Below, one piece after another: positions 5,878-60,788 of a stretch of DNA of 64,000 nucleotides. Each line of letters opens with the position of its first letter. The first letter of the stretch is position 1. The translations under genes and the position numbers were made by a program. Location: IMG/VR virus record IMGVR_UViG_3300027754_000034, positions 1 through 64,000 of that record; one strand, 5' to 3'. The notes beneath the pieces were generated by a model, which saw only the letters and a list, made by a program, of their open reading frames with translations, searched no databases and was not told the origin of the DNA.

Positions 5878-5880
5878 AAA

Positions 5881-19842: not shown

Positions 19843-19856
19843 GGGTATTGTGTTTC

Positions 19857-22800
19857 ATGTCATTTGATACTTCAGGAGCTGTGCTTGAGGGAGTGAGACT
19901 TTCTCAAAGCGTAAATACTCTTGTGCTACCGCCAAGAACCTTGGTACAGCCTCAGGATACCCATGATTTTAACAAGATTTCTCAAAGAGCTGAATATTGT
20001 ATATTTGTAACTGGTCAGTCAAAAGATGCAGATGGTATTTATATTAATGATCCGAATTTGAAGTTTAGATGGACTCGTAATGATTCAATATTTAGATTTT
20101 CTTACGATAACGTAAGTCGTAGATGGTTTCCAGCTCCCGGTAGTTCTCCCACAAGGCTAGGAGTGATTTCTAATGAAAATAGACTAACTGCTCCAATTCC
20201 AGTAGATAATGGAGTATCGAATTACCAAGTATATGTAAGTGTTCCGAGAGTATACGAATTTCAATATGTTTTGGTGCTAAGTTTCTCTAATCCGCCTCCT
20301 GGAACGGTAGAAATAAATAGAGAGACTGGTGAGTTAAACTTTAGTGAACAAGACATATCAAACCCAGACCTTGCAAATCAAATAGTTTATATCAGTCGCC
20401 AGAGCTTCTTTAATCGAGCCAGATTTAATGGAAATATCATAACCATTAATTCAGATGGGTCCTACGAGGCCTTTCTGAATCCAATCCCTACTTCTGGAGA
20501 ATACCCTCTTTTAAGAATTGGTTATACTGAATATTTAGTATCCATTTCATATCCAAATGAATCTTCGATGCCCGTCCCCACTTCTTCTGGGATCATAAAT
20601 TATGCTTTAGACACTGGGAGGGCATTTATTTATGATTCCGAAGCTAATTCAGGCGAAACCATATTTTATGATGGTGTAATCAACGGAGAAACTTCCGCAA
20701 ATCAATATCAACTTGCTGTTATTCCCGACACTTCACCGTTCTTACCCTTGTCAATATATATAGGGCAGTCTACAGATTTCATTAATTTAGATGATACTAC
20801 ACGTTTCTTATTCTGGGGATCTAGAAGCGAAAAGGATTATTACTTAAACGTGTCAGTAGTAGATGAAAATCCTACGTTTACGGATTCAGGGACCATCGAA
20901 ATCAATAAAGTAAACGGAAATGTTTACATGAATTCCTATGATTGTGACCGTCTTAAGGGGTCATTTCTTCGTTATCTTGATAGCTATCTTGAGATTGAAA
21001 ATGGTATAACTTTTCAAATATTTAGAAGTGGTGCCAATGAAACGGGATTTGTAAACAGCTATGATTTTTTCGAATATTATAAAATAACGAATTCTGTTAT
21101 GTCTGATAACATCAGCGGGTCTCCATTTCTTTTTTTACCGAGCCGTCCGATAGATGATTCTTACCTGTCGTATCGAGTCACTGATGCCCCAGGAAGTAGC
21201 GGTACGTTTAGTGGAAGTCTTAAGAAAGCAGAAAATCCTGAAGATTTAGGTCTAGGTTATAAGGTAGACTTTAGTACTAAGACTCTTTCTTTCTCTAAAA
21301 GGGTAGAAGAGAATAAGACTGTAGGAGTTACTACCAATATTTTAAAATTAAAATATGCCGCTTTAATACCTGGTGGATTCGAAATAAAGAAGAACAATGA
21401 ACCGCTAGATTCTTCTGACTATTCTTTAGATATCGGTGCCGGTTTAGTCACTTTTTTAGAATCTGTAGGAGAAAATGACGAATTAAATGCTTTTGATGTT
21501 CTAGGTCATGCCCAAGGAGATACTTTCACATCATTTAGTTTTCAGTTTAATGCTCTTTATGTTAATAAATATATTTTGGTATCGATTGGGGAGAATGTTG
21601 GTTTTTATCGCATAAAAGATTTCATAAATGGTAATACAATTAGAGTTGAGGGGCTGTTCCCTAAAGACGAAAATGTTACCGTTGATATAAAGTCCACAAA
21701 AGAGATCATATGTGATAGGGTCTGGACCTCCATTAATCCAAGAATGAAATTGTTCACTCTGGAGAAGAAAAATCCAGATACAGGCGAATATGAATATCAT
21801 GACCAATCTAATTATTCCATAATACCTGAATTGGGTCAAATAACCCTAAATGAAACACCTGACCCCAATGATGTCTTCAGAGCTAATTATTTATGGATAA
21901 ATTCTCCCATAGAAGGAATCAATAGAAATGTTTCTGAACTTAACGTAAAGGTCACTAAAGAAGAAAAAATCGAAATTCTTGCCAGCAAAATACGTTTAGA
22001 AAAAGCTAGTTATGTAAAAGGTAAAAACTACGTTAGTATAAACCAAGACAATAAATCAATAGTCCCATTAAAGGGATTCAGAGTAATCGCAGACGGTATA
22101 ACTGTTCCTGCAAGTCAGATTCGGTTTATCAACAATAACTCAATATTCTTAGGTATTATTTTAGAAAATCAAGAGATATATGTTGATTATTGGATAGAAG
22201 AAAATACTGGGGGTTCTAGAGTATTTACTCTCATAAATACTCCTATTGATATAGATATTCCTGAATTTATTCCCGACAATGATAATAAAATACTAGTGAT
22301 AAATGAGGATTTTACAGGAATCATAAAACCTGGGAGTGCCATATGTGTTCAAGACACTAATATATACATCGTTGAAGCTAGCGTATATGACTCGTTAAAA
22401 GACACTACGTCGATTGTGTTCGAATCTCCTATCCAAGTAAGTTACAAAGGCATATTTAAAACTTGCGACCCCGTATCATTAAACCAAGTTACACAAGCAT
22501 CGAAAACATGTCCTAAGGGATCCAATTCAGTCATAATCTCCGGATCAGTAGACGTTAAAGAAAATTACCTTATTAAAATAAACGACTTTCCCTTCATAGT
22601 TATAACATCTTCTTATGACATTAAAAAGGACGTTACTTCTATATCATTTAAATCTGTCCTTCCTGTAAATGCTATCATCCCATCTATTTTTATAAGTTTA
22701 GGACCGGTTGTCGATCCTAAACCCGATTTTTCTACACGTAAGTCAGCGGTTTTCCCTAGTCCATTTACGTTGCTAAGAGGCGGGGTAAACCCTCGTGTTT

Positions 22801-43980: not shown

Positions 43981-44628
43981 ATGCCAAAAGAGATATTCAA
44001 TAAAATGGGTTTTAATAACACTGCCACCATGAGTAGCACGATGGTAGAGTCCCTTTTTGGTATTAGCGGCGAGATTTTTTGGGAGTTAATAGATTCAAGG
44101 ACAGGTGAGACCACCAAGGGTCATATCAAAAACATAGTCACACTAGATGCAGGAATCCTGGTGGCTAGACTAATGAAATCTACGGCTACCCCAAATGTGT
44201 CCGAGCCGAAATTCGGAGTATATGCTTTAGCAGTAGGAACCGGTGATGTTGGCTGGAATCAAATGAACCCACCTCCTGCTAATGTTTACCAGCGTTCTCT
44301 ATATAATGAAATTGCTCGGAAAACCGTTGCTTCATCCTCATTTATAGACTCGGCAGGAGCTATTAGTGGTGTTCCTTCGCACGTAGTAGACTTTAATATT
44401 ACTTTCGCAGATAATGAGGCAGTCGGACCTCTTACTGAGATGGGATTACTGGGGGGAGATATTAATACTAATATGTCTATCCGCAATCCGGTTATGCCTC
44501 CGAATGGGTCATATGATCCCACAGCGGATGTTACTGGGAAAGATACCCTTTGCAATTATGTTACCTTCCCAGTATTAAACAAGCCACCGAGCAGTACTTT
44601 AAGCTGGACTTGGCGCTTAACTTTTTAG
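43981..44628 (+). CDS. Tail-collar fibre-like protein (DUF3751-like)
   Basis: NIVT...LAVGTG...LYNEIARK...EAVGPLTEMGLLGG...FPVLNK...LSWTWRLTF; RBS ggag. Confidence 0.7.
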   Translation: MPKEIFNKMGFNNTATMSSTMVESLFGISGEIFWELIDSRTGETTKGHIKNIVTLDAGILVARLMKSTATPNVSEPKFGVYALAVGTGDVGWNQMNPPPANVYQRSLYNEIARKTVASSSFIDSAGAISGVPSHVVDFNITFADNEAVGPLTEMGLLGGDINTNMSIRNPVMPPNGSYDPTADVTGKDTLCNYVTFPVLNKPPSSTLSWTWRLTF

Positions 44629-44644
44629 TGTATATTTAATATGT
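44613..44644 (+). repeat. End X, copy 1 (32-bp direct repeat)
   Basis: gcgcttaactttttagtgtatatttaatatgt, identical to 46556-46587; contains the last codons and stop of the collar gene, a TATATT box and ATG. Confidence 0.95.
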
Positions 44645-46541
44645 GAGAAAAGACATTTCCGGATTATTAGTTCATATAGATTTAGATGCGACAGAATTAA
44701 AATTTGGCGTCTTAAAAGACAATCAGTCAAGATGTGTCGTGTCTTGCCATGGGTGTCTAGAGACTCATGACTCTAAGATAATACTCTTAAAGAGTCATAT
44801 TTCAAAAAGGGAATTTTATTACTGTAGTAGCTGTTTAGGCAAAATGTCTTGGACAGAGGAAAAGAAGAAGAAAATTAAAGATTACTGGTCAGTCCCTGAA
44901 AATATATTGAAGGAGCATGAAATTAGAAAGGATAAATGGAAAAACGGAAAATATAGGTCTCAGATGGAAAATATTATCCAAGAAAGGTCTGCGACTCCAG
45001 CATTCAAGAATAAAATGTCCGTTTTATCTTTAAAGAAGTGGGAGGACCCTTCTTACCACTTAAATATCTCTGACCAGATTAAAAATAAGTGGGAAGACCC
45101 GGAATATCGTAATAAGCAGGAAGCTTATAAAACAGATGAGTGGAAGTCTGAGCATTCAAAAACGCAGACGTTACTTTGGACTGATGAAAGCTATAAACAG
45201 AACATATCACGTAAAATATCGGAAGCATGGAATGATGACGAATATAGGAATAATCAAGTAATTAAGCAGACACAGGTTTGGCTGAATCCTGATCATAAAG
45301 AAAAACAGTCACGCATGATGAAAGAAAAATGGAAAGATCCTTCTTTCAGAGCGAAATATGAAAATCTTTGGAAGTCTAAGTCATGGCGGAAAAACCTTTC
45401 CGACACTTTAAAGAAAATATGTAGTAATCCAGAATATAAAGCAAAATTAAGTGAAACCTCGAAATCTAGATGGGGAAATCCAGAATATAGAGAAAAAGTA
45501 TCAAAAGGGGTTAGTCGGGCGTGGGATGACCCCGATTACAGGCAAAATAAGGCAGAAAGTGCTAAGGCTTTTTGGGATAACGAAGATAATCGGCAAAAAT
45601 TTGCATTAATTAGAGCTGCTCAATCTGGACGTCGTTCTAATATTGAAAAAATAGTAAGCGAAATTTTAAAGGGATTAAATATTAATTTTGAAGAACAAAA
45701 AGCTCTTGGTGTTTATGTTTTTGATTTTTATCTCAATGAATATGATTTATATATAGAATGCCAGGGGGAATATTGGCATTCTTTGCCTGGTAGAAAAGAA
45801 AGAGATGCCGCAAAGTATACTTATCTTGAGAAGGCAGCTCCCAAGTCCAGAATTTTATATCTATATGAACATGAATTTATAAATCCCAATACTATATTAT
45901 CTAAATTAATGAATGCCACGATACCACAAAACATGCCAGGTAATGACTTTATTGAAAGCTTCAGATTTCAGGATCTGCTTATTAAGACAGTAGAAAGAGA
46001 GGAAGGAGCAAGTTTTTTAAATGCTTTTCACTATGCGGCGAATGGTAGGGCCGGGAAAAGTATTTATGGAGTCTATTTGGGTAGTGTGTTGATTGCTGTA
46101 GCGAAGTTTTCTTCCGTAATACGCCAAGAATCAGCTTCGTCATTAGGACTTCATCCGAAGAATGTTTGTGAATTGGATAGATTCTGCATTCATCCTAGAT
46201 ATCATAAACGAAATTTCGCTAGTTGGGTTTTGTCTAGAGTGACTAAAATGGTATTAAGTGACACTAGAATAAATTATATAATATCATTTGCAGATAGTAC
46301 CTATGGACATAATGGAACCATCTATAAAGCAGCCAATTGGGGGTACGTAAGTAATGTTAAGGCTGATTATTATTATGTGAATGAAGAAGGGTTTATCCTC
46401 CACAAGAAAACTCTTTATAATAGAGCAGTGAAGATGAAATGTACCGAAAAACAATATGCTGAAACACATAATTACATGAAATGCTGGGGCCGAGAAAAGT
46501 TCAAATTCATATACCCACGAATAGTAAAGACACTCTCCTAA
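44643..46541 (+). CDS. Fusion: Zn finger + 17-aa Trp repeats + Vsr/DUF559-like endonuclease + Mom-like GNAT DNA-modification domain
   Basis: CHGC...CSSC; WxDPxY repeats; SNIEKIV...FDFYL...IECQGEYWH...ERDAAK; FLNAFHY...YGVY...ELDRFC...NFASWVLSR...IISFADSTYGHNGTIYKAANW. Confidence 0.85.
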   Translation: MRKDISGLLVHIDLDATELKFGVLKDNQSRCVVSCHGCLETHDSKIILLKSHISKREFYYCSSCLGKMSWTEEKKKKIKDYWSVPENILKEHEIRKDKWKNGKYRSQMENIIQERSATPAFKNKMSVLSLKKWEDPSYHLNISDQIKNKWEDPEYRNKQEAYKTDEWKSEHSKTQTLLWTDESYKQNISRKISEAWNDDEYRNNQVIKQTQVWLNPDHKEKQSRMMKEKWKDPSFRAKYENLWKSKSWRKNLSDTLKKICSNPEYKAKLSETSKSRWGNPEYREKVSKGVSRAWDDPDYRQNKAESAKAFWDNEDNRQKFALIRAAQSGRRSNIEKIVSEILKGLNINFEEQKALGVYVFDFYLNEYDLYIECQGEYWHSLPGRKERDAAKYTYLEKAAPKSRILYLYEHEFINPNTILSKLMNATIPQNMPGNDFIESFRFQDLLIKTVEREEGASFLNAFHYAANGRAGKSIYGVYLGSVLIAVAKFSSVIRQESASSLGLHPKNVCELDRFCIHPRYHKRNFASWVLSRVTKMVLSDTRINYIISFADSTYGHNGTIYKAANWGYVSNVKADYYYVNEEGFILHKKTLYNRAVKMKCTEKQYAETHNYMKCWGREKFKFIYPRIVKTLS

Positions 46542-46555
46542 CCAAAATATATATA
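46469..46555 (+). repeat. End Y (87 bp: last codons of the fusion gene plus 14 nt downstream)
   Basis: Matches 47331-47416 with 6 substitutions and one 1-nt deletion. Confidence 0.93.
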
Positions 46556-46587
46556 GCGCTTAACTTTTTAGTGTATATTTAATATGT
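46556..46587 (+). repeat. End X, copy 2
   Basis: 32/32 identical to 44613-44644; supplies the ATG of the 156-aa gene. Confidence 0.95.
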
Positions 46588-47054
46588 TTGAATTGACTGA
46601 ATCAAGGTGGTGGTATTATCATGATTCTACGGCACATTTCACATTTGATGGTATTTTCGACGGGGAATCCTTCGTATTTGTAGTTCCAGTCAAATATAGT
46701 TTTTCTACAGAGGAAGATTCATATGGACTGATCCTTAACGTTCTTATCCCTGATGAGTCAGAATGTACCACTGGTGGCACTCTCAAATTAGATGGTGTTG
46801 AGGTCCCCAGAAGTGATGAACGTCATAAGAGATTCTTGAAGGAAAAAGACCTCAGCAACAAGCAGATCGGATGGTCTGCTTTATCTGATCAACTCCTTGA
46901 GTTCGTTACCGCTAATGTGGAGGCGTTGAACGAGAGATTAAGGGATGAGCGGGCCGATGACGAAGCTTATTGTGTGGAGCAGTGCCTCAAAGATCGCGCG
47001 CCGACCGATGACCTCCTCGCGCGCTTGAAGAAGCCCGATTCATTGTCGAACTAG
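46584..47054 (+). CDS. Hypothetical acidic protein (cargo of the second cassette)
   Basis: 156-aa ORF starting at the ATG within X; no SD; 3' part visibly more GC-rich than the neighbouring genes. Confidence 0.7.
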   Translation: MFELTESRWWYYHDSTAHFTFDGIFDGESFVFVVPVKYSFSTEEDSYGLILNVLIPDESECTTGGTLKLDGVEVPRSDERHKRFLKEKDLSNKQIGWSALSDQLLEFVTANVEALNERLRDERADDEAYCVEQCLKDRAPTDDLLARLKKPDSLSN

Positions 47055-47330: not shown

Positions 47331-47416
47331 TAATTACAAGAAATGCTGGGCCGAGAGAAGTCCAAATTCGTATATCCACGAATAGTAAAGACACTCTCCT
47401 AACCAAAGTATATATA
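47331..47416 (+). pseudogene. End Y': frameshifted copy of the 3' end of the endonuclease-Mom gene
   Basis: taattacaagaaatgctgggccgagagaagtccaaattcgtatatccacgaatagtaaagacactctcctaaccaaagtatatata aligns to 46469-46555. Confidence 0.85.
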
Positions 47417-51083: not shown

Positions 51084-54000
51084 ATGCCCATTAATCCACT
51101 CGGAGCCGGAGTAAGCAGATACATTAATGATAGAGACCGGCAGTATGCTGCTGTAGTTTTTCAGGTTGGTAAGCCACCCCTGGATTCTGAATTAAATTTA
51201 ATATCTCTCATTGATTTAGAGTCCAAAGCTGAGGAAGCACGCAGCCGCGTGGCATCCGGCTGGCTGATGAATGAAATAAACCCTTATGCTGATTTCTTAA
51301 CCCGGCCAGAATTTTCGAATCAGTTTTATTTCGGTAATAACTTCGCTGGAGAGTCCCGCAATATCACTTGGGCCATAGTAAATGGATGGCCCATACCTGT
51401 AGCAGGTACCAAAACGGGCGCTCCTCCATTAGCTGCTAATAATGTCGACTATTGGAATCGAATTACCCTAAACCCTCCATCCACTTCTACTGGCGGCAAT
51501 AGAGCAGAATTTGCTTTTCTAGAAGTTTGGCTTCAGCGTGTTGATGTAGACCCAGCAGCACCAGCAATTGCTCCTGGAAAACCGCTACGTGGTTATATAT
51601 ATAAATTTGGCAATGTAGAGGGTGGATTTTCCCCACTGCCAGATGAATTGGTAGACCCCGACATTAATTTTGAGACCACCAAGCGTGTTCAAATACAATA
51701 CAGAATCCGCGTTGTTGCTGATATTAATTTAGTATCCAATCCCGAGGGATTCGATCCTACATTAGTGTTTGCTCAGGGTAGCCTTTCAGGCCCGTCAGTC
51801 GTTCCATTCTCCAATATGCGAGAAGCCTTAGGCGACCCAGGATTGTGGCGTGCTGGAACCGGCGACCCAACTACTTTCGGAACTGCAGATGGGTTCGTAT
51901 ATGCTATACCGATTTGTGGTGTTTTTAGAAGAAATGCTGCGGGATTCAGCGACGTCGGTAACTTAGCTGGTTCATTTAATAGAAATTCAAAGGCTTTAAC
52001 GCGGGTGAATGCACTCACATTTACCGCTCCCATCGCCTTGCAAGCTAGTTTATCCTCTTTCGCTACTAGCTTTTCCATAGCCAGCATATCCGGAACTCCT
52101 CTAGATACCTTGACCTCATTTGGTGAGGCATACTTTAGAATAGATGATGAGATAGTAAGAGTCACCAGCGTAATTCAGATATCAGCCATAAATTATACAA
52201 TCAATATTGAAAGAGGGCAACTTAATACAATAGCACGCTCACATTTATTCGGGACCGAGTTATTTATATATACTGTTCGGCCAGACGGGTTGTTTGCGGA
52301 TCAGGTGTCCAATACTGATATTTTAGACTTGCGTCACTCAATAGCTGATAAATTTGATTATGATAGCATACTTCAATCTAACGTCGTAGAATTACTCAAA
52401 GGAAACCTACGAAGTACCTGGAAGAGGTACGGCACAACCAACACTGCTGGTCCAGTAATCCTATATGGTGATAGAATCACAGATTCTTCAATATTTACGG
52501 GCGGTCTTACTAGACTAGATGCTCCAGATGGTAATCGCAGAGCATACTCAGATGCCTCTGTAATGCAAAAATTCGTATTACCCGTCACAGTTCCTAGCAA
52601 TTCCCTCACACTAGGGAATAATATCCAGACCACTGTCAGTCCATATACTGGGACAGTAGTATGGTCCGGATCAGCTCCCGCTCACCCAACTGGTAGCCGA
52701 CTTAACGGTACTTACCCAACTTGGTGGAACGGCGACCAAATCACGGTAAACATACTTCCATTCCAAAATGGTGTTTCGATTGCTGATGCAAATCAGATAA
52801 GATTTATTACCCCATCAGAATTATCGGATTCTATCCTCGTTAGATTCGAGGGAATGACATCTGATCCTAACGGGGGTGATCCACTAGAATTACCCCCAAC
52901 CGCTCCAACAGCTTCGGACCCTTATTTAAACATCCCGATTTCTGGTCAAAGAATACTTAGAAACGGACAAGGAATCAGTGTAGTCGTTGATGGTTCCGGT
53001 AATCTAGTGATTACTTTAGCTAGCGGCGCTATCGATTCTGAATTCCAAGAATTCGTAGATGCTATTCAGGGAGAAACCGATCCAGGTCGAGTATCTCAGT
53101 ACAAGATGTATGTGGAGTTTACTGTTCTATATGGAACTGGTCGTGGTCTATCTCACCGACCCGACTGGATCCATATGGTCCAGTATAGAGGAACCCCGAC
53201 TAACGTAACAAAGACTCTACGTCGTAGTGGTCTTTCTACACTGTCGCCAATGGTACCTACCTACATAGGCGATTCTCCATTAGTTCAGACCGGAAACGAT
53301 CGTAATTTAGCCAAAACGTCGGAGGTCATGTTTGATCCCGGCTCTAAAACTGTTTACGTCGCTCCATACAGAATGCTGACCATTCCTCCTCTGGTTGCCA
53401 GGAATGGTGCTCTACTAAATTGGTATAATGGTGGAGCGAACACCCAAGGCTCAATGCCGCAATTAGACCAGGATGGCGTGAATACCGTTCATCCTGTTGT
53501 TGATCCCCTTACACTCTTCTTCACGGGGTCTGTTACTAAGTATGTCGAATTACCATTCCAGTACTTACCAAAACCAGGATTTCATTATGTTCCAATAGTT
53601 CCGATTACTGATTTGGTATATTCATCAGGTATCAATTTCCTAATGAAGTCGAGCCAGGGAGTTGTAGGAAATACTCCGGACTATAACCGAAATTATGTCT
53701 CCTACCCAGCCAATACCCCCGGTTACTATATAGTGACACCGGAAGTAGGAGAAGTGTATGGAAATAGCAACGGTAATAAATCCATATACGGTGAAAAGAT
53801 AACGATAGAAAAGGTAACAGGTAGAGAGGGACAGGCTTTTAAGGGAATCAAATTTCCACCCTTCTTAGGACCGGCAAGAATTACTGGCATTTATCTCAGA
53901 AGTGGTCTTGATGTCTCTCCCGCTTCCACTCCCTTTAATAATGACCGAATATTTATTGGTGGGATAGGGACAGACGTCAATCTTCTGCGAGACAGCTTCG

Positions 54001-55715
54001 ACGGACCAACGTTCCTCTTGGACGTTGATACGAACGGGGATCTATACTTTGTATTAAATGCCGAGGTTATAGACTTCAAGAGAGCTCCTGCAGGAACCAC
54101 TTTTGATAACGCACAATTCCTGGTCGAATGCACTTTGTTTTCTTATGACCGAGGATTCCTCCAGACAAATGGTCGCATTCTTTGCGCTAGAACGCTAGGA
54201 TCATCTGTAGCTCAGACTATTCCGGGATGGGACGGTTATTTATCTACGAACTTTAGCGTTTCCACGTTAGGTTTAATAGTCCCTGCTCCTTTGAGTGATA
54301 TCGCGAGTAACAACGAGGTAACTCTATACTACTCTCGGTCTCCATATCAGGGAGACCCATTCGGCACCCAGACAGCGTATTCCGATGATCCTTATAGACT
54401 CGGACCTCTGACTACTGGAGAGGCTTTAACTCTTCATAATAGTCCTCTTGGTCCTGTTCAAACACTAACTCTTCCCAATAAGGGGAATTTCGAAATATTA
54501 AGCTCTGTACGATTCGTGACTAGTCTTGGAACTGGTCGACTTTCGGGAGCGAATCCAATACCACTGCTTCTTCCCAGCGAGTCACCACTAAATCCTCCTG
54601 ACTACGCAGGAACTCTAGTGGACCAGACTAGAGAATATTCATTAAATCGAGTCGGCTATGACGACTGGTTTACTTCGAAATGGCCGTCAGATCCATCCTC
54701 ATTATCCACTAGGCCCCCTACGGTTCCGGGGGCTATTTCAGAACGTTTCGATAATGATATACATCCGGAATTTGCAGGGTGTGTTTCTAATTTACCTCTT
54801 GGTGCTTATTTTAGAGATAAGGACTTCGTAGGTAAAACTCTTTATCAAATGCGAACAGCAAGTAATATCGGCGGAAATCCCGTTGGTACACTCACCTTCA
54901 CCAATTATGAAGCGTCAATGGTTAAGGGCGTTGACGGTAGGTCTACCTGGCAAGGTCGAGATTATCTTTGCGGTAATAGTAGTAGTACATCAGGGTTCGG
55001 CACAGAATCATTAGCAAGAGTTGATGGAACCTATAATCTAGGTGATACCAAGGTCTTTAAGACCACTCGTGGCGGGGCTGCTTATTCCACCACTGGTCCT
55101 TGGCCTGGTGGAATACTAACTGGTTCATTCATCAAGACAAGACCAAATTCCGATGTTGGTGCAGTCTTACTTTGCAATGCCTATCTCGTAAGATCTCATC
55201 CTGAACAGTCACAGGGTGTAGAACTTCATCCCGGCAATGAACTACAAATGATACTGGTAACGCAGGCCGTTCCGGCTTATTTGCGGGACAATGAAATAGT
55301 TCATTCAGCTAGCGGAATCAGTGAGGGATATACTGCAGTAGAAAGATATAGGTTATTGGGGAAGCCTTTAGAAAAGCGGAGAGGCAGACTACCTAATGAC
55401 GTTTTGCCAGCAGGCAAGCCCTTGTACGGAAATAATACTTCGTTGCTGTTCGGTTCAGCTGATCCACCATTGGTGGCTGCAATACAAGAATCGATAGCTG
55501 TACTGGTTGACCTTCAAACAGTATTTGATTTATCGAAGAAGCCTGCAGACCCCTCCACAGTACAGATGTTCGTAAATGGAGTTAAACTCCAATACGGAAT
55601 AGATTATACCGTGGGTGGCGTTGATGATAAGGTCGTTACATATAGTCCTAGCCCTCCCGTTAGACCGGAATTATTAACCACTGATCTTGTGGAATTCTGG
55701 TATTTGGCTATCTAG
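51084..55715 (+). CDS. Tail fibre/baseplate anchor protein, paralog B (1543 aa)
   Basis: YAAVVFQVGKPPLDSELNL, LEVW, ETTKRVQIQYRIR, GLWRAG, RPDGLFADQV...DILDLR; C-terminal MFVNGVKLQYGIDYTV module. Confidence 0.75.
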   Translation: MPINPLGAGVSRYINDRDRQYAAVVFQVGKPPLDSELNLISLIDLESKAEEARSRVASGWLMNEINPYADFLTRPEFSNQFYFGNNFAGESRNITWAIVNGWPIPVAGTKTGAPPLAANNVDYWNRITLNPPSTSTGGNRAEFAFLEVWLQRVDVDPAAPAIAPGKPLRGYIYKFGNVEGGFSPLPDELVDPDINFETTKRVQIQYRIRVVADINLVSNPEGFDPTLVFAQGSLSGPSVVPFSNMREALGDPGLWRAGTGDPTTFGTADGFVYAIPICGVFRRNAAGFSDVGNLAGSFNRNSKALTRVNALTFTAPIALQASLSSFATSFSIASISGTPLDTLTSFGEAYFRIDDEIVRVTSVIQISAINYTINIERGQLNTIARSHLFGTELFIYTVRPDGLFADQVSNTDILDLRHSIADKFDYDSILQSNVVELLKGNLRSTWKRYGTTNTAGPVILYGDRITDSSIFTGGLTRLDAPDGNRRAYSDASVMQKFVLPVTVPSNSLTLGNNIQTTVSPYTGTVVWSGSAPAHPTGSRLNGTYPTWWNGDQITVNILPFQNGVSIADANQIRFITPSELSDSILVRFEGMTSDPNGGDPLELPPTAPTASDPYLNIPISGQRILRNGQGISVVVDGSGNLVITLASGAIDSEFQEFVDAIQGETDPGRVSQYKMYVEFTVLYGTGRGLSHRPDWIHMVQYRGTPTNVTKTLRRSGLSTLSPMVPTYIGDSPLVQTGNDRNLAKTSEVMFDPGSKTVYVAPYRMLTIPPLVARNGALLNWYNGGANTQGSMPQLDQDGVNTVHPVVDPLTLFFTGSVTKYVELPFQYLPKPGFHYVPIVPITDLVYSSGINFLMKSSQGVVGNTPDYNRNYVSYPANTPGYYIVTPEVGEVYGNSNGNKSIYGEKITIEKVTGREGQAFKGIKFPPFLGPARITGIYLRSGLDVSPASTPFNNDRIFIGGIGTDVNLLRDSFDGPTFLLDVDTNGDLYFVLNAEVIDFKRAPAGTTFDNAQFLVECTLFSYDRGFLQTNGRILCARTLGSSVAQTIPGWDGYLSTNFSVSTLGLIVPAPLSDIASNNEVTLYYSRSPYQGDPFGTQTAYSDDPYRLGPLTTGEALTLHNSPLGPVQTLTLPNKGNFEILSSVRFVTSLGTGRLSGANPIPLLLPSESPLNPPDYAGTLVDQTREYSLNRVGYDDWFTSKWPSDPSSLSTRPPTVPGAISERFDNDIHPEFAGCVSNLPLGAYFRDKDFVGKTLYQMRTASNIGGNPVGTLTFTNYEASMVKGVDGRSTWQGRDYLCGNSSSTSGFGTESLARVDGTYNLGDTKVFKTTRGGAAYSTTGPWPGGILTGSFIKTRPNSDVGAVLLCNAYLVRSHPEQSQGVELHPGNELQMILVTQAVPAYLRDNEIVHSASGISEGYTAVERYRLLGKPLEKRRGRLPNDVLPAGKPLYGNNTSLLFGSADPPLVAAIQESIAVLVDLQTVFDLSKKPADPSTVQMFVNGVKLQYGIDYTVGGVDDKVVTYSPSPPVRPELLTTDLVEFWYLAI

Positions 55716-55793: not shown

Positions 55794-55865
55794 TAAAACT
55801 AAATGACTCGTCCTCGTTCGCAACAGATCAACGATCCCGTTACACGTTATTCGAAGATCCCCTTA
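55794..55865 (+). repeat. 72-bp perfect direct repeat, copy 1 (leader plus first 21 codons of tailspike 1)
   Basis: Identical to 60808-60879; near-identity extends to about 100 bp. Confidence 0.96.
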
Positions 55866-58800
55866 CATGATAACCCCATATCAGGGTCAAGCTCTACCCT
55901 GATAACGGGGTCTGCTTATAATGACTTCTTAGATAAGTCCATATTAAAATTCACAGGAGGCGTTGAGGTACCGTGCCCAGCAGTTCTTATAGCTTCTTTG
56001 GCGGATCCTTATTTACTAGTTGCGGGAAACTCATTTAAGGTCTCTGTTAATTTAAATCAAGCTGTAGAAATTAAAATCACTGCTGCACAATTGGTGGTTC
56101 TTGGTGCCAGTAGTTTCGCTACCGTAGACAGGGTAATCACCCTGATAAATAGCACATTATCTTCGGTAAATATAACTTGGGCAAACGTAGCTGATGTTAC
56201 TGACTCCGGTTATTTAAGATTAACAAGTCCGACTTCGGGTTCCTCATCATCTATTTCAATATCAGGGCTTCCAGCCACATTACAAAAATTAGGTTTCGGG
56301 AACGTAGCCACATCCATATCCTACGGTAAGGATGTTTCACGGGGAATAGTTACCGTTGAACCGGATTCGTTCGGTGGGTACGCTCAAGCAGTATGGGAAG
56401 ACGGTAGCCCATTAAACGCCATATCGAATACCTTTTATTTCAACAATTCATCAGCTTACGGTTTATCGCAGAAAGTACCGACTGGACAACCTGTATATGG
56501 TAGAATTTCCGAAACCACGGCTCCTTCGTTAGAAATAAACTGGTATAGCAAATGTGAAGGATCAAACCCAGTAGTTTCCAAAAACCCATCATTCAGTTCG
56601 TTGGGTGCTGGCGAAACTTTAGTATTTTCCTCATATGATTTATATGGCAACTCCAGCAATAGCTTTACGGCTACATTTAGTGCTGGACCAACTTCTCTAC
56701 AAGATGTTATAAACGTAATAAATAATGCGTGGAACAGCATAACTGGTGGTCTTCAAGGCAGAGTTATAAGTCGAGTAACTTCCCCTTATTTCGTTGTTGG
56801 ATCGTTATATTTTAAATTAAATAATAACGCGACCATTACCGCAAATTTTGATGGAACAGAAAAAACTGCCACTTTAATAATAGCCAGAATCAACACTGCT
56901 GTCGCTGCGGCCATGCAGTCGTCCCAAGGAGAAGCTTATGTGATAGGCTCCGACTCTTTTGGTATTAGATCTAAAACTGGTTTCGGGGAATCAAGTTCAG
57001 TAGAAATATTAGGATTTAGTAGTTCTGATACCGAGAGGTGTCTTGGATGTCCTGTCGGTATATATAAAGGGTGGGAATTCTGTAAAGCCCGTGGTTCAAA
57101 TATACAGTTATCTGCGGCTTCCCCGACTTCTTATTACATAATTGGTGCGGGTTCTACAGCTCTAACCTTTTTAGGTTTATCTCATTACAGCACGGGCGTC
57201 AAGACCTCAATATTAAACAGATATATTAGAACAGAATTTCCTTCATATGATTCAACTATCGTACCTTTAAATTTCGCGGTCACTCTTTTAACACCAGAAT
57301 ATCTAGAGGCTGGAGATGTTCCTGATGACATCTTCACTAAGGAACGATTTACAGATTTAGTATCCTCTAATGCCTATAAATATCCGTTAGCCTCAAGCAA
57401 CACAAATGCAGCACGAGCAGGACAACAAGCCAGATATGGCCTAGACGGTTACATTCAAGCTGCAACTCTGCCTTATGAATTAGGAAGCGTTAAAGCGGGA
57501 AATGTTTATTTTCCATTAAATGGTGCTGTTTTATCTTTTCAATATACACTAAATTCGCAAGACTTAATATTCGAGGGCTTCCATCCTTTAAACCCTTCAA
57601 TTCGTCTTTATATTCACGATGACCAGACTGGTAGACCTGCTTGGTGTACATCAGTCAATGCTGTAAAGACGAATGTAAACGCATACACCCCAGATTTACC
57701 GGCTGAAGCCTCTTCAATCGTAGACCTTAGCGAAGAGGGGATTAGTATTAGCTTCCGAGATGCAAACAGTGCTACTCCGTATGTTCCAGAAAATGACTTT
57801 TCTTTCGCTCCATCAAGTTCTCCATCATTTGTAAAGGAGTTGTCCTTTTCTAAAAATACTTTCATTAATTTTAAACTTGGATCTGCAGCAATTAGTGATA
57901 AAAATATTTCAGATAATACTACAATAAATTTTTATAAGTTCACAAGTCCTGCTGGGAGCAACCAAGGAGACTCCGCTTTAAGACTTAACAGCAGGATAGT
58001 GGAAGACAAGACAATATTTCAGTCTATTAATGGACGCATTGAAATTTCATGTGGCGACGGCATCAGTACCTTTGGAGATTTTAACGGGATTGACGCTATA
58101 TGGAAAATATGTTCCATACTTTCGGTCCTACCAGCTTCGGATACACGACCAGTCTTCATCGCATTAAAGTCCGGTACTTACCATAATGATAATGCAAAAC
58201 CTTTAGTATTTTCGAATAGAAATGTTACAATCATAGGAGAGGGTGACGTAAACATAATTACACCTTCCCCATCAGATGACGGTACCATTACCTTTAATGG
58301 TACCGTAGACCCATCTTCAATTTCAAATCATATAAAATTAGAAAATATTAGGATATTTGCTAATATTTTTAGAGCAATAGAATGTGAGAATGTTACCATA
58401 GAATTAATAAACTGTTATATTGAAGGCTTGGGATTGTCTATCAGGGCAACGAGCACATCGGGTTCCTCCACATATTCCAATGGTGCTGCAGCCTACGTCA
58501 GGCAATGCACCATCGCTCATTCAAGTGTTAAAGATACCAATAGTTTAGTATACCTTAAATCATTAAATGATGACTCTCCTCCTGTCGTGTTCGACTCTTG
58601 TGTTTTTGACTGTAGCAACTGTATTGATTTTACCGTTCTTTTGGTAGAAGGACTATCAAAGAGAAATTCATATGAGGAGGTCTCGTTTAAAAATTCATCC
58701 TTTAAATTAGGAAAATATACGACACCAACAGTCGCATCAGTTCCTCCTTACACTCTTCCGAATTTAAATCATGATAACGGGTTATTAGCTCTACATCCCG

Positions 58801-60788
58801 CTAATGATGGTAGGACTGCAGAAGGTCTTATAATCGAATCAGTAATTTTTGAAGACTGCAGTATAGAAAACGCAGTGCAAGACTCCATTATTCTGCAGTT
58901 ATGTAGTGCTAGTGTTTCTCAATATGCTGCTGAATTTGCATCACCAAACAATTGGGGTCAGGTTAACAACCTCACCTTCAGTCGATGTAATTTTAACGTT
59001 TTATTCGGTGAAGAAACCCCGTATTCAACTATCGCAAAGTTCATAGTGGGGCAAGGAGTTCTCAATACAGTTCTAGATTCTTGTAATTTATATCTTAAAA
59101 CACAAAATGCAGTATTGGGGATGTCCGGTCAGTTACCCGACTGGTTTAAGTTTGTGAATCCTTCTGGTTATCGTGATATTGATTTAAACGCCACGAGTCT
59201 AATTTCTTTCAGCACGATGTTTGCCTTTGGTGGTAATAATACCAGAGTCATAAACACGAATTTTAATGATATATTTAGTAAATTCGGATTAACTGGAGTG
59301 TCCACCGTTATTTATGGTCTTTCTCTCGATTCTTTCATTGTAGAAAATTGCAGGATCTTAGGAACTGATGAACAAAGCGGTAATGGGGTTGAAGATTCTA
59401 CCAATATTTTCATAATAAATGAAGACCCATCTTCCCCATCATTTCTATCCAGAAGGGCCGTATCTATTTCAGGTTTAGACATAGTAGGAAAAAATCTCAC
59501 GAACGGGTACGAATGGAATAAAGAGTATGGATCAATTTGCAGTTTCATAGGGAATAATTTTAATATCGATAAATGTAGGATTGAAGGATGGACTAATACT
59601 CTTAGTCCTGTTTTGAAAAGTCGCACATATGGAATAAAGTTCAACGGTCATAATTATAAAATACTTAATTGTACAATTGCAGATACACAATGGGGTATAT
59701 ATAACATAAGCTTCGAGTATACCCCATTATTTGCTGAATGGGGAAATTATGTGATTTCGAACAATACGATAAGAGTGGGTGATTACCAACCAGCAGCTGA
59801 ACTGTCTTCTGGAATATACTTAACTAATAGCGGTTTCGCACCCACGTCGGATCCTATCATTATCAGTAACAATAACGTCAGTACAGGATACTGCACAGAT
59901 ATAATAGATGCTGCCATAGACTGCATGATAACCCCAGAAGATGCTAGTATATTAGATGATTCGCCTCTACTACACATACACGACAACACCATTAAAATAA
60001 GTACCGATTTAAAAAACGCAATATCTATTTTACCATCCGCTTTGGAAACAAGTCCTGGAGACATTCACAATCCCAAAGCAATAGTGTATGGTAATACCGG
60101 ACAAAAAATACAAGACTTGTCGATACTTACACCATTTTGTTATTTAGCGAATTATACTGCCGGTACTGGATATACGGCGATAAATCATAATAACGTACTA
60201 CCAGGCAGTTTAATAGGTGCAGAAACCGATACTAGCATAGTAGAATTTTTTCCAAAGCGCACATCCACTCCACTTAGTACTTATATTAATCCAGTTAGGT
60301 CGAGCAATCCAATTCATGTAGTTAATCTTCCCGATATTTGGAAACTGAACTTGAATATTAGTCTTACCGTAGAACATCAGGGTATAAACGGTCTGTGGAC
60401 AGCCCCTCCCGTTTTTTATATCATGACTACTAGAATAGTCTATTCGTATGACAATATAACTTACATAGACCTCCCTGATTCAGAAGTGAGTTCTTCGTAC
60501 TTTGAGGTTACGTCAATCATAGATCCTGGAATAGTTGATACATATATTTCTCCATTAACTCTGACTGGAGAGTTACCAAATGTCTCAACTTTCCATGATG
60601 GAGTTTTTTTTGATGTAGAAGCCGCTTTCTTAATACTCCCTCCGATCTCGCCTCTTGCGCCTTCTCCAATTCCATCTAATGCTTTTAACTTGGAGTTAAG
60701 GTGGTCAGCATCCGTTAAAACTCCCAAAAAAGATTATTTAGACGGTGCCATCATGTTAAACAACACTCTTCGACTAAAAACAGTCTGA
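55803..60788 (+). CDS. Tailspike / receptor-binding protein 1 with parallel beta-helix (pectin lyase-like) region
   Basis: ISCGDGISTFGDFNGIDAI...IALKSGTY...NVTIIGEG cap followed by Asn/Cys-ladder repeats (IELINCYI, VVFDSCVF, VISNNTI, IISNNNV). Confidence 0.8.
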   Translation: MTRPRSQQINDPVTRYSKIPLHDNPISGSSSTLITGSAYNDFLDKSILKFTGGVEVPCPAVLIASLADPYLLVAGNSFKVSVNLNQAVEIKITAAQLVVLGASSFATVDRVITLINSTLSSVNITWANVADVTDSGYLRLTSPTSGSSSSISISGLPATLQKLGFGNVATSISYGKDVSRGIVTVEPDSFGGYAQAVWEDGSPLNAISNTFYFNNSSAYGLSQKVPTGQPVYGRISETTAPSLEINWYSKCEGSNPVVSKNPSFSSLGAGETLVFSSYDLYGNSSNSFTATFSAGPTSLQDVINVINNAWNSITGGLQGRVISRVTSPYFVVGSLYFKLNNNATITANFDGTEKTATLIIARINTAVAAAMQSSQGEAYVIGSDSFGIRSKTGFGESSSVEILGFSSSDTERCLGCPVGIYKGWEFCKARGSNIQLSAASPTSYYIIGAGSTALTFLGLSHYSTGVKTSILNRYIRTEFPSYDSTIVPLNFAVTLLTPEYLEAGDVPDDIFTKERFTDLVSSNAYKYPLASSNTNAARAGQQARYGLDGYIQAATLPYELGSVKAGNVYFPLNGAVLSFQYTLNSQDLIFEGFHPLNPSIRLYIHDDQTGRPAWCTSVNAVKTNVNAYTPDLPAEASSIVDLSEEGISISFRDANSATPYVPENDFSFAPSSSPSFVKELSFSKNTFINFKLGSAAISDKNISDNTTINFYKFTSPAGSNQGDSALRLNSRIVEDKTIFQSINGRIEISCGDGISTFGDFNGIDAIWKICSILSVLPASDTRPVFIALKSGTYHNDNAKPLVFSNRNVTIIGEGDVNIITPSPSDDGTITFNGTVDPSSISNHIKLENIRIFANIFRAIECENVTIELINCYIEGLGLSIRATSTSGSSTYSNGAAAYVRQCTIAHSSVKDTNSLVYLKSLNDDSPPVVFDSCVFDCSNCIDFTVLLVEGLSKRNSYEEVSFKNSSFKLGKYTTPTVASVPPYTLPNLNHDNGLLALHPANDGRTAEGLIIESVIFEDCSIENAVQDSIILQLCSASVSQYAAEFASPNNWGQVNNLTFSRCNFNVLFGEETPYSTIAKFIVGQGVLNTVLDSCNLYLKTQNAVLGMSGQLPDWFKFVNPSGYRDIDLNATSLISFSTMFAFGGNNTRVINTNFNDIFSKFGLTGVSTVIYGLSLDSFIVENCRILGTDEQSGNGVEDSTNIFIINEDPSSPSFLSRRAVSISGLDIVGKNLTNGYEWNKEYGSICSFIGNNFNIDKCRIEGWTNTLSPVLKSRTYGIKFNGHNYKILNCTIADTQWGIYNISFEYTPLFAEWGNYVISNNTIRVGDYQPAAELSSGIYLTNSGFAPTSDPIIISNNNVSTGYCTDIIDAAIDCMITPEDASILDDSPLLHIHDNTIKISTDLKNAISILPSALETSPGDIHNPKAIVYGNTGQKIQDLSILTPFCYLANYTAGTGYTAINHNNVLPGSLIGAETDTSIVEFFPKRTSTPLSTYINPVRSSNPIHVVNLPDIWKLNLNISLTVEHQGINGLWTAPPVFYIMTTRIVYSYDNITYIDLPDSEVSSSYFEVTSIIDPGIVDTYISPLTLTGELPNVSTFHDGVFFDVEAAFLILPPISPLAPSPIPSNAFNLELRWSASVKTPKKDYLDGAIMLNNTLRLKTV

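What the first reader, a model, noticed from the sequence alone, without database searches (positions are those of the whole stretch)
44643..46541. Single-chain endonuclease + Mom-type DNA-modification enzyme: a candidate selfish restriction-modification-like or homing system
Seen: Zn finger, Trp repeats, an intact Vsr/DUF559-like nuclease motif set (E...FDFY...IECQGEYWH...D) and a C-terminal domain with HY, ELxRF, ASWxLSR and ISFADxxxGHxGTIYKAANW. Known: phage Mu Mom is a GNAT-fold enzyme that hypermodifies adenine and blocks restriction, and Vsr-like domains with helical repeats occur in free-standing phage homing endonucleases. Inference: one protein may mark its own genome and cut unmarked competing phage or host DNA, or pay for its homing with anti-restriction. 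Similar fusions (e.g. Hef-like proteins) may already be in databases; I cannot check novelty.
Basis: partly seen in the sequence, partly recalled or inferred. Interest (0 to 1): 0.85.

Follow-up and report, generated by a model that had tools for sequence, protein, structure and literature searches.

The report
Hef-type homing endonuclease with Mom domain
This jumbo-phage gene is a free-standing selfish homing endonuclease of the known Hef family whose C-terminal half is a well-preserved copy of the phage Mu Mom DNA-modifying enzyme; the fusion and the cut-and-protect idea are already published, but nobody has tested what the Mom half does.

Summary
The nuclease profile matches I-Bth0305I (PDB 3R3P, E 5e-12). 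The Mom domain scores Pfam 1e-25, and its best structural match is Mu Mom (8BV8).

It is not new as a kind. The architecture is that of phage U5 Hef, a tested homing endonuclease, and of phrog_559. At least 518 clusters (at 50% identity) match a nuclease+Mom profile at E<=1e-30. Iyer et al. 2021 already described Mom-REase fusions in jumbo phages and proposed the same restriction-modification logic.

Comparative genomics supports mobility. In most of about 24 related jumbo-phage genomes the two flanking tail-module genes abut. Five lineages carry this gene at that site, one carries a GIY-YIG endonuclease there, and this locus keeps a frameshifted relic of a second copy's 3' end.

In this clade six Mom catalytic residues are almost invariant across 151 clusters. 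Mu's essential R151 is Thr. In U5 Hef the domain is degenerate. Whether the domain modifies DNA, and whether that protects against the gene's own nuclease, is untested.

The parts
44643..46541 (+). Hef-Mom gene, 632 aa, GTG start
   Evidence: Intact ORF. Full-length orthologues at 40-50% identity. phrog_559 spans aa 54-608.
44730..44840 (+). N-terminal zinc-ribbon module (aa ~30-66; C35, C38, C61, C64)
   Evidence: The four Cys are >=90% conserved in alignments A1/A4. The model shows a small beta module at E30-34 and E41-45. A CxxC...CxxC pattern occurs in 85 of 151 family representatives.
44826..45623 (+). Array of ~15-16 Trp-anchored 17-residue helical repeats (S-x3-K-x2-W-x-D-P-E-Y-R-x-K); presumed DNA-binding module
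   Evidence: W-W spacing is mostly 17. The model shows 16 consecutive helices, aa 62-327, pLDDT ~85-90. It is the fastest-evolving part, 30-41% identical to orthologues. The same repeat type occurs in GIY-YIG endonucleases. Foldseek hits a NUMOD3 protein. No Pfam NUMOD hit; the GerD hit is a repeat artefact.
45624..45920 (+). Vsr-like (EDxHD-type) nuclease domain, aa ~328-426; E335, D361, E372, Q374, H379, D388, K391
   Evidence: Profile A2 vs PDB: 3R3P I-Bth0305I at E 4.9e-12, 3HRL at 8e-4, 1CW0 Vsr weak. D361, H379, D388 and K391 are conserved in 148-150 of 151 clusters.
45921..45974 (+). Flexible linker, aa 427-444
   Evidence: pLDDT below 50 at aa 430-434 and no secondary structure.
45975..46517 (+). 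Mom-family GNAT domain, aa ~445-625; H463, Y464, R513, S527, D551, Y561 match Mu H58, Y59, R111, S124, D149, Y159; T553 sits at the Mu R151 position
   Evidence: Pfam PF25680 at 1.1e-25. 8BV8 at E 2e-6 with the single sequence and 6e-11 with the profile. AF2 model pLDDT 95.6. Foldseek top hit 8BV8, E 5e-12, TM 0.68-0.70, with generic GNATs at >=3e-6. Residue conservation.
44613..44643 (+). Repeat A: last 16 nt of upstream gene g215, a 12-nt spacer and ATG
   Evidence: Identical copy at 46556-46586. Unique to this locus in the window.
46469..46555 (+). Repeat B: last ~24 codons of Hef-Mom, the stop codon and 14 nt
   Evidence: Copy at 47331-47416, ~92-95% identical. Unique to this locus.
46556..46586 (+). 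Repeat A': starts exactly where B ends and supplies the start codon of ORF156
46584..47054 (+). ORF156, an orphan gene in the second cassette
   Evidence: No Pfam, PHROG or PADLOC hit. Found only on this phage's two contigs. The Atlas gives no informative relatives.
47331..47416 (+). Repeat B': frameshifted relic of a Hef-Mom 3' end (1-nt deletion in a G run)
   Evidence: tblastn aa 615-632, 83% identity, E 5e-4. Repeat spacing of 862 vs 861 nt shows the indel.
43981..44628 (+). Upstream flank g215 (phrog_5417), conserved across the phage clade
47813..50374 (+). Downstream flank g853, conserved; abuts g215 in genomes without the insert

Best explanation
The gene is a free-standing homing endonuclease gene of the Hef family. 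Its nuclease belongs to the Vsr-like 'EDxHD' class typified by I-Bth0305I. It sits in an intergenic hotspot between two conserved tail-module genes (g215 and g853) of an uncultured ~257-kb jumbo phage.

Shown here:
- the four-part architecture;
- intact and conserved nuclease residues;
- insertion at a site that is empty in most relatives;
- patchy presence among equally related genomes;
- a different homing endonuclease gene at the same site in another genome;
- a decayed second 3' end at this locus.

Inferred mechanism: the zinc ribbon and the 17-residue repeat array bind a long DNA site at or near the g215/g853 junction of genomes that lack the gene. The nuclease cuts there during co-infection. 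Recombinational repair from the gene-carrying genome then copies the gene and its flanks.

The C-terminal Mom domain is an ancestral part of the family, not a new fusion. In this jumbo-phage clade its active site is almost invariant, so I think it is most likely a working DNA N6-adenine acyl- or aminoacyl-transferase tethered to the endonuclease's own DNA-binding module. Its most plausible job is to modify adenines in or near the enzyme's own recognition sites in the resident genome, in the manner of a single-chain type IIG restriction-modification enzyme.

My probabilities:
- Hef-type homing endonuclease: about 0.85.
- Mom domain enzymatically active on DNA: about 0.5.
- That activity protects against the protein's own nuclease: about 0.3.
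For: Domains.

Family links:
- The closest annotated relatives are 'Hef-like homing endonucleases', matching across nuclease and Mom.
- U5 hef (AY262133.2) has the same layout. Hef cleaves near its own locus in nrdB (PMC2988022, PMC3322345, both citing Sandegren 2005).
- Taylor et al. 2011 (PMC3239194) placed Hef in the Vsr-like family.

Mobility:
- g215 abuts or overlaps g853 (gap -30 to +17 nt) in 9 loci representing 8 genomes, including the most distant ones (L014, L026, L027, L029, L032/33, L035, L036, L038).
- Hef-Mom is at the site in 5 lineages.
- Close relatives L014, L015, L016, L019 and L022 lack it.
- L019 carries a GIY-YIG endonuclease with the same repeat type at the site.

Selection:
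- Nuclease 56-71% and Mom 51-58% identical to orthologues, against 61-69% for g215 and 35-64% for g853.
- Across 151 clusters at <=50% identity: H58 151/151, Y59 150, R111 151, S124 141 (plus 8 Thr), D149 151, Y159 151; nuclease D361 150, H379 148, D388 150.

These six Mom residues are the ones whose mutation impairs Mu Mom (PMC7261163, PMC13219725).
Against: - No cleavage site, homing event or DNA modification has been observed for this protein. The phage is uncultured.
- Orthologues have diverged about as much as their flanks and share the site. That also fits long vertical residence as a useful gene.
- Mu's essential R151 is Thr here (135 of 151 clusters), and the Mu dimer residue W48 is not conserved.
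- In U5 Hef, the tested member, the Mom-like domain has Y59L and D149N and no Pfam Mom hit. Homing therefore works without a canonical Mom site.
- The GC content (35%) is lower than the immediate flanks (43-45%), but it is close to the neighbouring 2222-aa gene (36.6%), so composition is weak evidence.
Confidence: 0.8

Rival explanations
1. It is a stably inherited single-chain restriction-modification-like weapon, as Iyer et al. 2021 proposed, not a selfish homing element. The Mom domain modifies the phage genome broadly, and the nuclease degrades unmodified host or superinfecting-phage DNA.
For: The model is published for jumbo-phage Mom-REase fusions (PMC7824862). Both active sites are near-invariant across 151 clusters. 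Orthologues sit at the same site in five lineages, with divergence similar to their flanks. The Mom domain is basic, K+R 29 vs D+E 15.
Against: - The distribution is patchy among equally related genomes, with empty sites.
- Another genome has a GIY-YIG endonuclease at the identical site.
- This locus holds a relic copy.
- The long, fast-evolving DNA-binding array is typical of site-specific homing enzymes.
- The tested relative, U5 Hef, is site-specific (PMC2988022).
- The family reaches 10-11 places matched per Campylobacter phage genome, which looks like selfish spread.
- The only PADLOC defence-model match is a Vsr nicking-endonuclease model at E 2e-5.
Confidence: 0.2
2. The Mom-like domain is not an enzyme in this context. 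It serves as a DNA-binding or adenine-flipping module, or as a dimerisation module, for the nuclease. Self-protection comes only from sequence differences at the target site, as in ordinary homing endonucleases.
For: U5 Hef homes with a degenerate Mom-like domain (Y59L, D149N, no Pfam hit). R151, essential in Mu, is Thr here. Mu Mom is a dimer, I-Bth0305I needs dimerisation, and Mom's HTH-like insertion is proposed to bind DNA (PMC13219725, PMC3239194).
Against: Six catalytic-pocket residues are invariant or nearly so in 151 clusters that share <=50% identity. A pure binding or dimerisation role would not predict this. It contrasts with the relaxed pattern in the classical Hef branch. W48, the Mu dimer contact, is not conserved.
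Confidence: 0.3
3. The Mom domain gives the host phage general anti-restriction protection, like Mu Mom. The benefit keeps the selfish endonuclease gene from being lost ('paying rent'), with no link to the nuclease's own specificity.
For: Mu Mom protects DNA from many restriction enzymes (PMC7261163, PMC13219725). The gene has been retained with intact active sites in several lineages.
Against: Many close relatives do without the gene. A domain tethered to a long sequence-specific binding array on a probably low-abundance protein is poorly suited to genome-wide modification. Stand-alone Mom genes exist in many phages for that purpose.
Confidence: 0.15

Closest known systems
Hef (homing endonuclease-like function) of T-even phage U5 and the 'Hef-like' proteins of Campylobacter, Acinetobacter, Dickeya, Yersinia and other phages
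   Same: The core is the same: a variable N-terminal DNA-binding part, a Vsr-like nuclease and a Mom-like GNAT domain. They are free-standing genes wedged between conserved genes: nrdA/nrdB in U5, gp24/gp23 in phage Lazarus, and next to the tail-tube gene in CP30A. U5 Hef cleaves near its own locus (PMC2988022, PMC3322345).
   Different: Only ~21-29% identical over nuclease + Mom. In the classical Hef branch the Mom-like domain is degenerate: Y59 becomes L or I, D149 becomes N in U5 and Lazarus, and the Pfam Mom score is below threshold or absent. The jumbo-phage clade keeps H, Y, R, S, D and Y but has Thr at R151. The N-terminal modules differ; here it is a zinc ribbon plus a 17-residue repeat array.
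I-Bth0305I, prototype of the EDxHD (Vsr-like) homing endonucleases (PDB 3R3P)
   Same: The nuclease domain is homologous (profile E 4.9e-12). D196/N208/H213/D222 correspond to D361/Q374/H379/D388.
   Different: I-Bth0305I is intron-encoded, 266 aa, has NUMOD/HTH DNA-binding motifs and no GNAT domain (PMC3239194).
Phage Mu Mom (PDB 8BV8), a Gly-tRNA(Gly)-dependent N6-adenine DNA aminoacyltransferase
   Same: Same family by Pfam, sequence profile and fold, including the region of the HTH-like insertion. H58, Y59, R111, S124, D149 and Y159 are conserved.
   Different: Mu Mom is a stand-alone 241-aa dimer. Here the domain is the C-terminus of a nuclease. R151 is Thr, R154 is His, and the W48 position is Glu. 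Identity is ~18-24%. The donor substrate and sequence context are unknown.
Mom-REase fusions of group 2 jumbo phages (Iyer, Anantharaman, Krishnan, Burroughs, Aravind 2021, Viruses 13:63)
   Same: The same architecture and the same host type (jumbo phage).
   Different: That paper treats the fusions as restriction-modification-like conflict systems and, by a text search, does not use the terms 'homing endonuclease' or 'Vsr'. The comparative evidence here points to homing-endonuclease behaviour.
Single-chain type IIG/IIC restriction-modification enzymes (e.g. Eco57I/MmeI type; from general knowledge)
   Same: A working precedent for one polypeptide that both modifies and cleaves DNA at the same recognition site.
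   Different: Those enzymes use SAM-dependent methyltransferase domains and PD-(D/E)XK nucleases, and they are cellular defence genes. No homology was tested or implied.

Membership tests
EDxHD / Vsr-like homing endonucleases (incl. Hef) | Nuclease domain homologous to the I-Bth0305I/Vsr catalytic domain | tested here: met
   Family profile vs PDB: 3R3P at E 4.9e-12 (48.9 bits), 3HRL at 8e-4, 1CW0 weak. Single-sequence Pfam hits to DUF559, Vsr and MTES_1575 are sub-threshold.
EDxHD / Vsr-like homing endonucleases (incl. Hef) | Catalytic residues E...D...x...H...D | tested here: met
   E335, D361, Q374, H379 and D388 are present. D361 is conserved in 150/151 clusters, H379 in 148/151 and D388 in 150/151. 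The first position is E here but Q in most relatives.
EDxHD / Vsr-like homing endonucleases (incl. Hef) | Separate sequence-specific DNA-binding module | tested here: inconclusive
   A zinc ribbon and a 17-residue helical repeat array are predicted. The repeat type is shared with GIY-YIG endonucleases, and Foldseek hits a NUMOD3 protein. There is no Pfam NUMOD hit, and DNA binding was not tested.
EDxHD / Vsr-like homing endonucleases (incl. Hef) | Mobile-element genomics: insertion between conserved genes, with presence/absence polymorphism | tested here: met
   Empty site in 9 loci (8 genomes), occupied in 5 lineages, a different endonuclease gene at the same site in L019, and a relic 3' end here.
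EDxHD / Vsr-like homing endonucleases (incl. Hef) | Site-specific cleavage near the insertion site and gene conversion in mixed infection | not testable with these tools
   Needs purified protein and a cultured phage.
Mom family (PF25680), DNA N6-adenine aminoacyltransferase | Sequence membership above the curated threshold | tested here: met
   PF25680 at 90.9 bits against a cut-off of 27.1, aa 445-625. phrog_1384 at 2e-27.
Mom family (PF25680), DNA N6-adenine aminoacyltransferase | GNAT fold with Mom as closest structure, including the two-helix insertion after the core | tested here: met
   Model pLDDT 95.6. 8BV8 is the top hit at E 5e-12, TM 0.68-0.70, 186 aligned columns. Helices at aa 588-597 and 602-608 lie in the region aligned to the Mu 175-209 insertion.
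Mom family (PF25680), DNA N6-adenine aminoacyltransferase | Residues H58, Y59, R111, S124, D149 and Y159, which are required for Mu Mom activity | tested here: met
   H463, Y464, R513, S527, D551 and Y561. They are conserved in 141-151 of 151 clusters. Mutational data: PMC7261163, PMC13219725.
Mom family (PF25680), DNA N6-adenine aminoacyltransferase | R151 (essential in Mu Mom) and W48 (dimer contact) | tested here: not met
   T553 aligns with R151, and Thr occupies that position in 135/151 clusters. Glu aligns with W48.
Mom family (PF25680), DNA N6-adenine aminoacyltransferase | Gly-tRNA(Gly)-dependent formation of 6-NcmdA in double-stranded DNA | not testable with these tools
   Needs the in vivo or in vitro assay of PMC13219725.
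Restriction-modification system (single-chain, type IIG-like logic) | Nuclease blocked by the modification made by the same protein, with shared specificity | not testable with these tools
   No biochemical data exist. The only PADLOC match is a Vsr nicking-endonuclease model at E 2e-5.

The most novel reading that the evidence does not exclude
In this jumbo-phage clade the Mom domain is an active, site-directed DNA adenine acyl- or aminoacyl-transferase. It uses the endonuclease's own DNA-binding array to hypermodify the homing site in the resident genome. That would make an epigenetically self-immunised homing endonuclease (a single-chain 'momylase-nuclease'). The invariant Thr553/His556 pair, in place of Mu's R151/R154, could mean a donor substrate other than Gly-tRNA(Gly).
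Probability: 0.2. Interest if true: 0.75.

Novelty: new member of a known kind. Interest (0 to 1): 0.42.

Why it matters
The gene is ordinary as a kind of thing: a Hef-type homing endonuclease, of which there are hundreds of clusters.

The useful result is the link between three bodies of work that the literature I searched treats separately:
- experimentally tested Hef homing endonucleases;
- the computationally predicted 'Mom-REase restriction-modification' fusions of jumbo phages;
- the newly solved mechanism of Mu Mom.

The fusion family splits into two branches. The classical Hef branch has a degenerate Mom-like pocket. A large jumbo-phage branch keeps six catalytic residues essentially invariant. 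That makes a clear, cheap experiment possible with the published Mom assays: does a homing endonuclease carry its own DNA-hypermodifying activity, and does that activity confer self-immunity? A yes would add a new mode of target-site protection for selfish nucleases and a new sequence-directed DNA-modifying enzyme. A no would show that a GNAT fold has been recruited as a DNA-recognition module.

Tried and rejected
1. Near-identical DNA in annotated phages: none found. The phage is known only from metagenome contigs.
2. The GerD and NHase Pfam/NCBIfam hits were rejected as artefacts of the Lys/Glu/Trp-rich repeats.
3. 'HNH endonuclease', the name of phrog_559, was rejected. No HNH motif is present, the nuclease is Vsr-like, and PMC11878797 says the same.
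4. Paralogues in the window: none, only the 18-codon relic.
5. Repeats A and B as a general promoter or RBS motif: rejected, because each occurs only at this locus. The promoter/terminator scan was at chance level.
6. A synonymous-codon signature of target-site immunity: all five gene-carrying lineages read TGG-CGC at the end of g215. One gene-less relative also has CGC and another has CGT, so the pattern is only anecdotal.
7. Hef relics in the intermediate-size gaps of other genomes: none at E 1e-3.
8. ORF156 function: no hit in Pfam, PHROGs, PADLOC, the Atlas or viral contigs beyond its own phage.
9. Bulk-DNA chemistry of Hef-rich Campylobacter phages as a test for adenine modification: the paper I could read reports only guanine replacements and says other modifications are unknown, so it decides nothing.
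10. The Sandegren 2005 paper could not be read. Its results are cited through reviews.
12. dN/dS was not attempted, because the nearest orthologue is ~50% identical and synonymous sites would be saturated.
Full report
**What is there.** window:44643-46541 (+) is a single uninterrupted ORF of 632 codons. Its GTG start lines up with the Met start of its orthologues. The window is the first 64 kb of IMG/VR contig UViG_3300027754_000034 (257,205 bp). A second contig carries an essentially identical (99.99%) locus. Neighbouring genes include a baseplate wedge subunit and a tail protein, so the gene lies in a late tail/baseplate module of an uncultured jumbo phage. No near-identical DNA exists among annotated phages.

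**Anatomy.** The full-length AlphaFold2 model (pLDDT 86) and the family alignments give four modules.
- Zinc ribbon: a small beta module with four near-invariant cysteines (C35, C38, C61, C64).
- Repeat array: aa 62-327, about 16 consecutive single helices. There are 15 Trp anchors, mostly 17 residues apart, with the consensus S-x3-K-x2-W-x-D-P-E-Y-R-x-K.
- Nuclease: an alpha/beta domain at aa ~328-426.
- Mom domain: a disordered linker and then a GNAT domain at aa ~445-625.

**The nuclease.** Single-sequence Pfam hits to DUF559, Vsr and MTES_1575 are just below threshold. A profile built from 33 family members hits I-Bth0305I (PDB 3R3P) at E 4.9e-12, and 3HRL at 8e-4. I-Bth0305I is the prototype of the Vsr-like 'EDxHD' homing endonucleases. 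D361, Q374, H379 and D388 align with its D196, N208, H213 and D222. D361, H379, D388 and K391 are conserved in 148-150 of 151 clusters. The first acidic position is E335 here and Q in most relatives.

**The Mom domain.**
- Pfam PF25680 scores E 1.1e-25, 90.9 bits against a cut-off of 27.1. phrog_1384 scores 2e-27.
- Mu Mom (8BV8) is hit at 2e-6 with the single sequence and 6e-11 with the profile.
- The domain model has pLDDT 95.6. Its best solved-structure match is 8BV8 (E 5e-12, TM ~0.7, 186 aligned columns). Generic GNATs follow at 3e-6 or worse.
- Two mutational studies of Mu Mom (PMC7261163; PMC13219725) identify H58, Y59, R111, S124, D149 and Y159 as required. Numbering follows the 2026 paper. 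Here they are H463, Y464, R513, S527, D551 and Y561.
- Two further Mu features are not kept. R151, whose Ala mutant is dead, aligns with T553. The dimer contact W48 aligns with Glu.

**It is a known architecture.**
- phrog_559 matches aa 54-608, almost end to end.
- The closest annotated proteins are 'Hef-like homing endonucleases' of Campylobacter phages, matching across both catalytic halves. Those phages show up to 10-11 matching places per genome.
- The original hef gene of phage U5 (AY262133.2, between nrdA and nrdB) has the same nuclease + Mom-like layout.
- Hef cleaves near its own locus (PMC2988022, PMC3322345, citing Sandegren 2005). Taylor et al. 2011 placed it in the Vsr-like family (PMC3239194).
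- Some GenBank annotators already write 'putative nuclease/acetyltransferase protein'.
- Iyer et al. [quoted passage not shown] They propose that momylation protects phage DNA while the nuclease attacks other DNA (PMC7824862).
- An exhaustive profile search with the nuclease + Mom region found 518 clusters (at 50% identity) at E<=1e-30. All 150 listed representatives matched the whole profile in one stretch.
- The viral structure library likewise returns many 400-700-aa 'endonuclease-like' or 'homing endonuclease' proteins.

**Evidence that it behaves as a mobile gene.** I collected 27 loci, about 24 distinct genomes, that carry the upstream gene g215.
- In 9 loci (8 genomes), including the most distant ones, g215 abuts or overlaps g853 (gap -30 to +17 nt). 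This is the ancestral, empty site.
- Hef-Mom occupies the site in five lineages: this phage and the L007, L009, L010/L024 and L017 types.
- Equally close relatives (L014, L015, L016, L019, L022) lack it. Others hold unrelated inserts.
- In L019 the same site holds a GIY-YIG endonuclease (Pfam 2.8e-8) with the same PEFRxK-type repeats. The site is therefore a homing hotspot, and the repeat array is a DNA-binding module shared between endonuclease families.
- Orthologues have diverged about as much as the flanks. The nuclease is 56-71% identical and Mom 51-58%, against 61-69% for g215 and 35-64% for g853. The N-terminal part is faster at 30-41%. This fits long residence with purifying selection on both enzymatic halves.

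**A local scar.** The locus has the layout A-[Hef-Mom]-B | A'-[ORF156]-B'.
- A (44613-44643) is the end of g215, a 12-nt spacer and ATG. It recurs identically at 46556-46586.
- B (46469-46555) is the last ~24 codons of Hef-Mom, the stop and 14 nt. It recurs at 47331-47416 with ~92-95% identity and a 1-nt deletion.
- B ends exactly where A' begins.
- Both repeats are unique to this locus in the window.
- The simplest reading is a join between two related genomes that carried alternative cassettes at this site, or a tandem duplication followed by replacement. Either way, B' is the relic of another Hef-Mom copy.
- A speculative extension: the left edge of A', 16 nt before the g215 stop, marks a break end from a homing event that was finished by end-joining.

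**Is the Mom half active?** Across 151 clusters that share at most 50% identity:
- H58 is 151/151, Y59 150, R111 151, S124 141 (plus 8 Thr), D149 151 and Y159 151.
- The R151 position is Thr in 135. The R154 position is His in 148.
- The classical Hef branch is relaxed: Y59 is L or I, and D149 is N in U5 and Lazarus. Pfam Mom is below threshold in CP30A and gives no hit at E<=0.05 in U5.

So homing does not require a canonical Mom pocket. In the jumbo-phage branch, however, the pocket is under very strong constraint, which is best explained by catalysis. The altered Thr/His pair may mean a different donor or binding mode. My literature searches found no experiment on any fused Mom domain.

**Verdict.** The gene is a Hef-type free-standing homing endonuclease with the family's Mom-like domain. 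It is a new member of a known and abundant kind. The cut-and-protect hypothesis is plausible, already published and still untested. The 2026 Mom assays make it directly testable.

Noticed in passing
window:44613-44643 / 46556-46586 and 46469-46555 / 47331-47416: Two pairs of direct repeats abut exactly at 46555/46556, giving two tandem cassettes (Hef-Mom and ORF156) with shared flanks. The second B copy is a frameshifted relic of a Hef-Mom 3' end. It looks like a recombination or homing scar.
   Followed up: yes
window:46584-47054: ORF156 is an orphan gene with higher GC (45%) than Hef-Mom (35%). It uses the duplicated g215-spacer-ATG as its start. No family or relative was found outside this phage's two contigs.
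   Followed up: partly
L019:~5094-6075: In a related 377-kb phage contig, the identical g215/g853 site holds a GIY-YIG homing endonuclease with the same PEFRxK-type repeats and C-terminal zinc fingers.
   Followed up: yes
window:47485-47778: An HU-like DNA-binding protein gene (PF00216, E 1e-13) lies in the same variable gap. The orthologous locus of the closest relative (L007) has two such genes, while the other related loci I compared show none.
   Followed up: partly
L021 (=L006):5145-8115 and L023:5163-6874: Other genomes carry unrelated inserts at the same site. L006 has ORFs of 217, 612 and 99 aa, with one PHROG of unknown function and no Pfam hits. L023 has a 260-aa ORF. Their functions are unknown.
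   Followed up: partly
L039:237-1868 (phage U5 hef): The experimentally tested Hef has a Mom-like C-terminal domain that Pfam no longer detects (Y59L, D149N). I found no paper that points out that Hef contains a Mom-related domain.
   Followed up: partly
window:47856-47881: A strong GC-rich hairpin (11-bp stem, 9 G-C pairs) lies just inside the 5' end of g853, close to the variable site. Its significance is unknown.
   Followed up: no
window:36394-43062 and other ORFs (19848-25157, 51084-55715, 55803-60788): The window holds several giant ORFs (1543-2222 aa), and most of those I scanned have no PHROG match (the 1769- and 1661-aa ORFs were not scanned). The 2222-aa protein has many repeats of a helical motif ending in N/S-x-H.
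   Followed up: no
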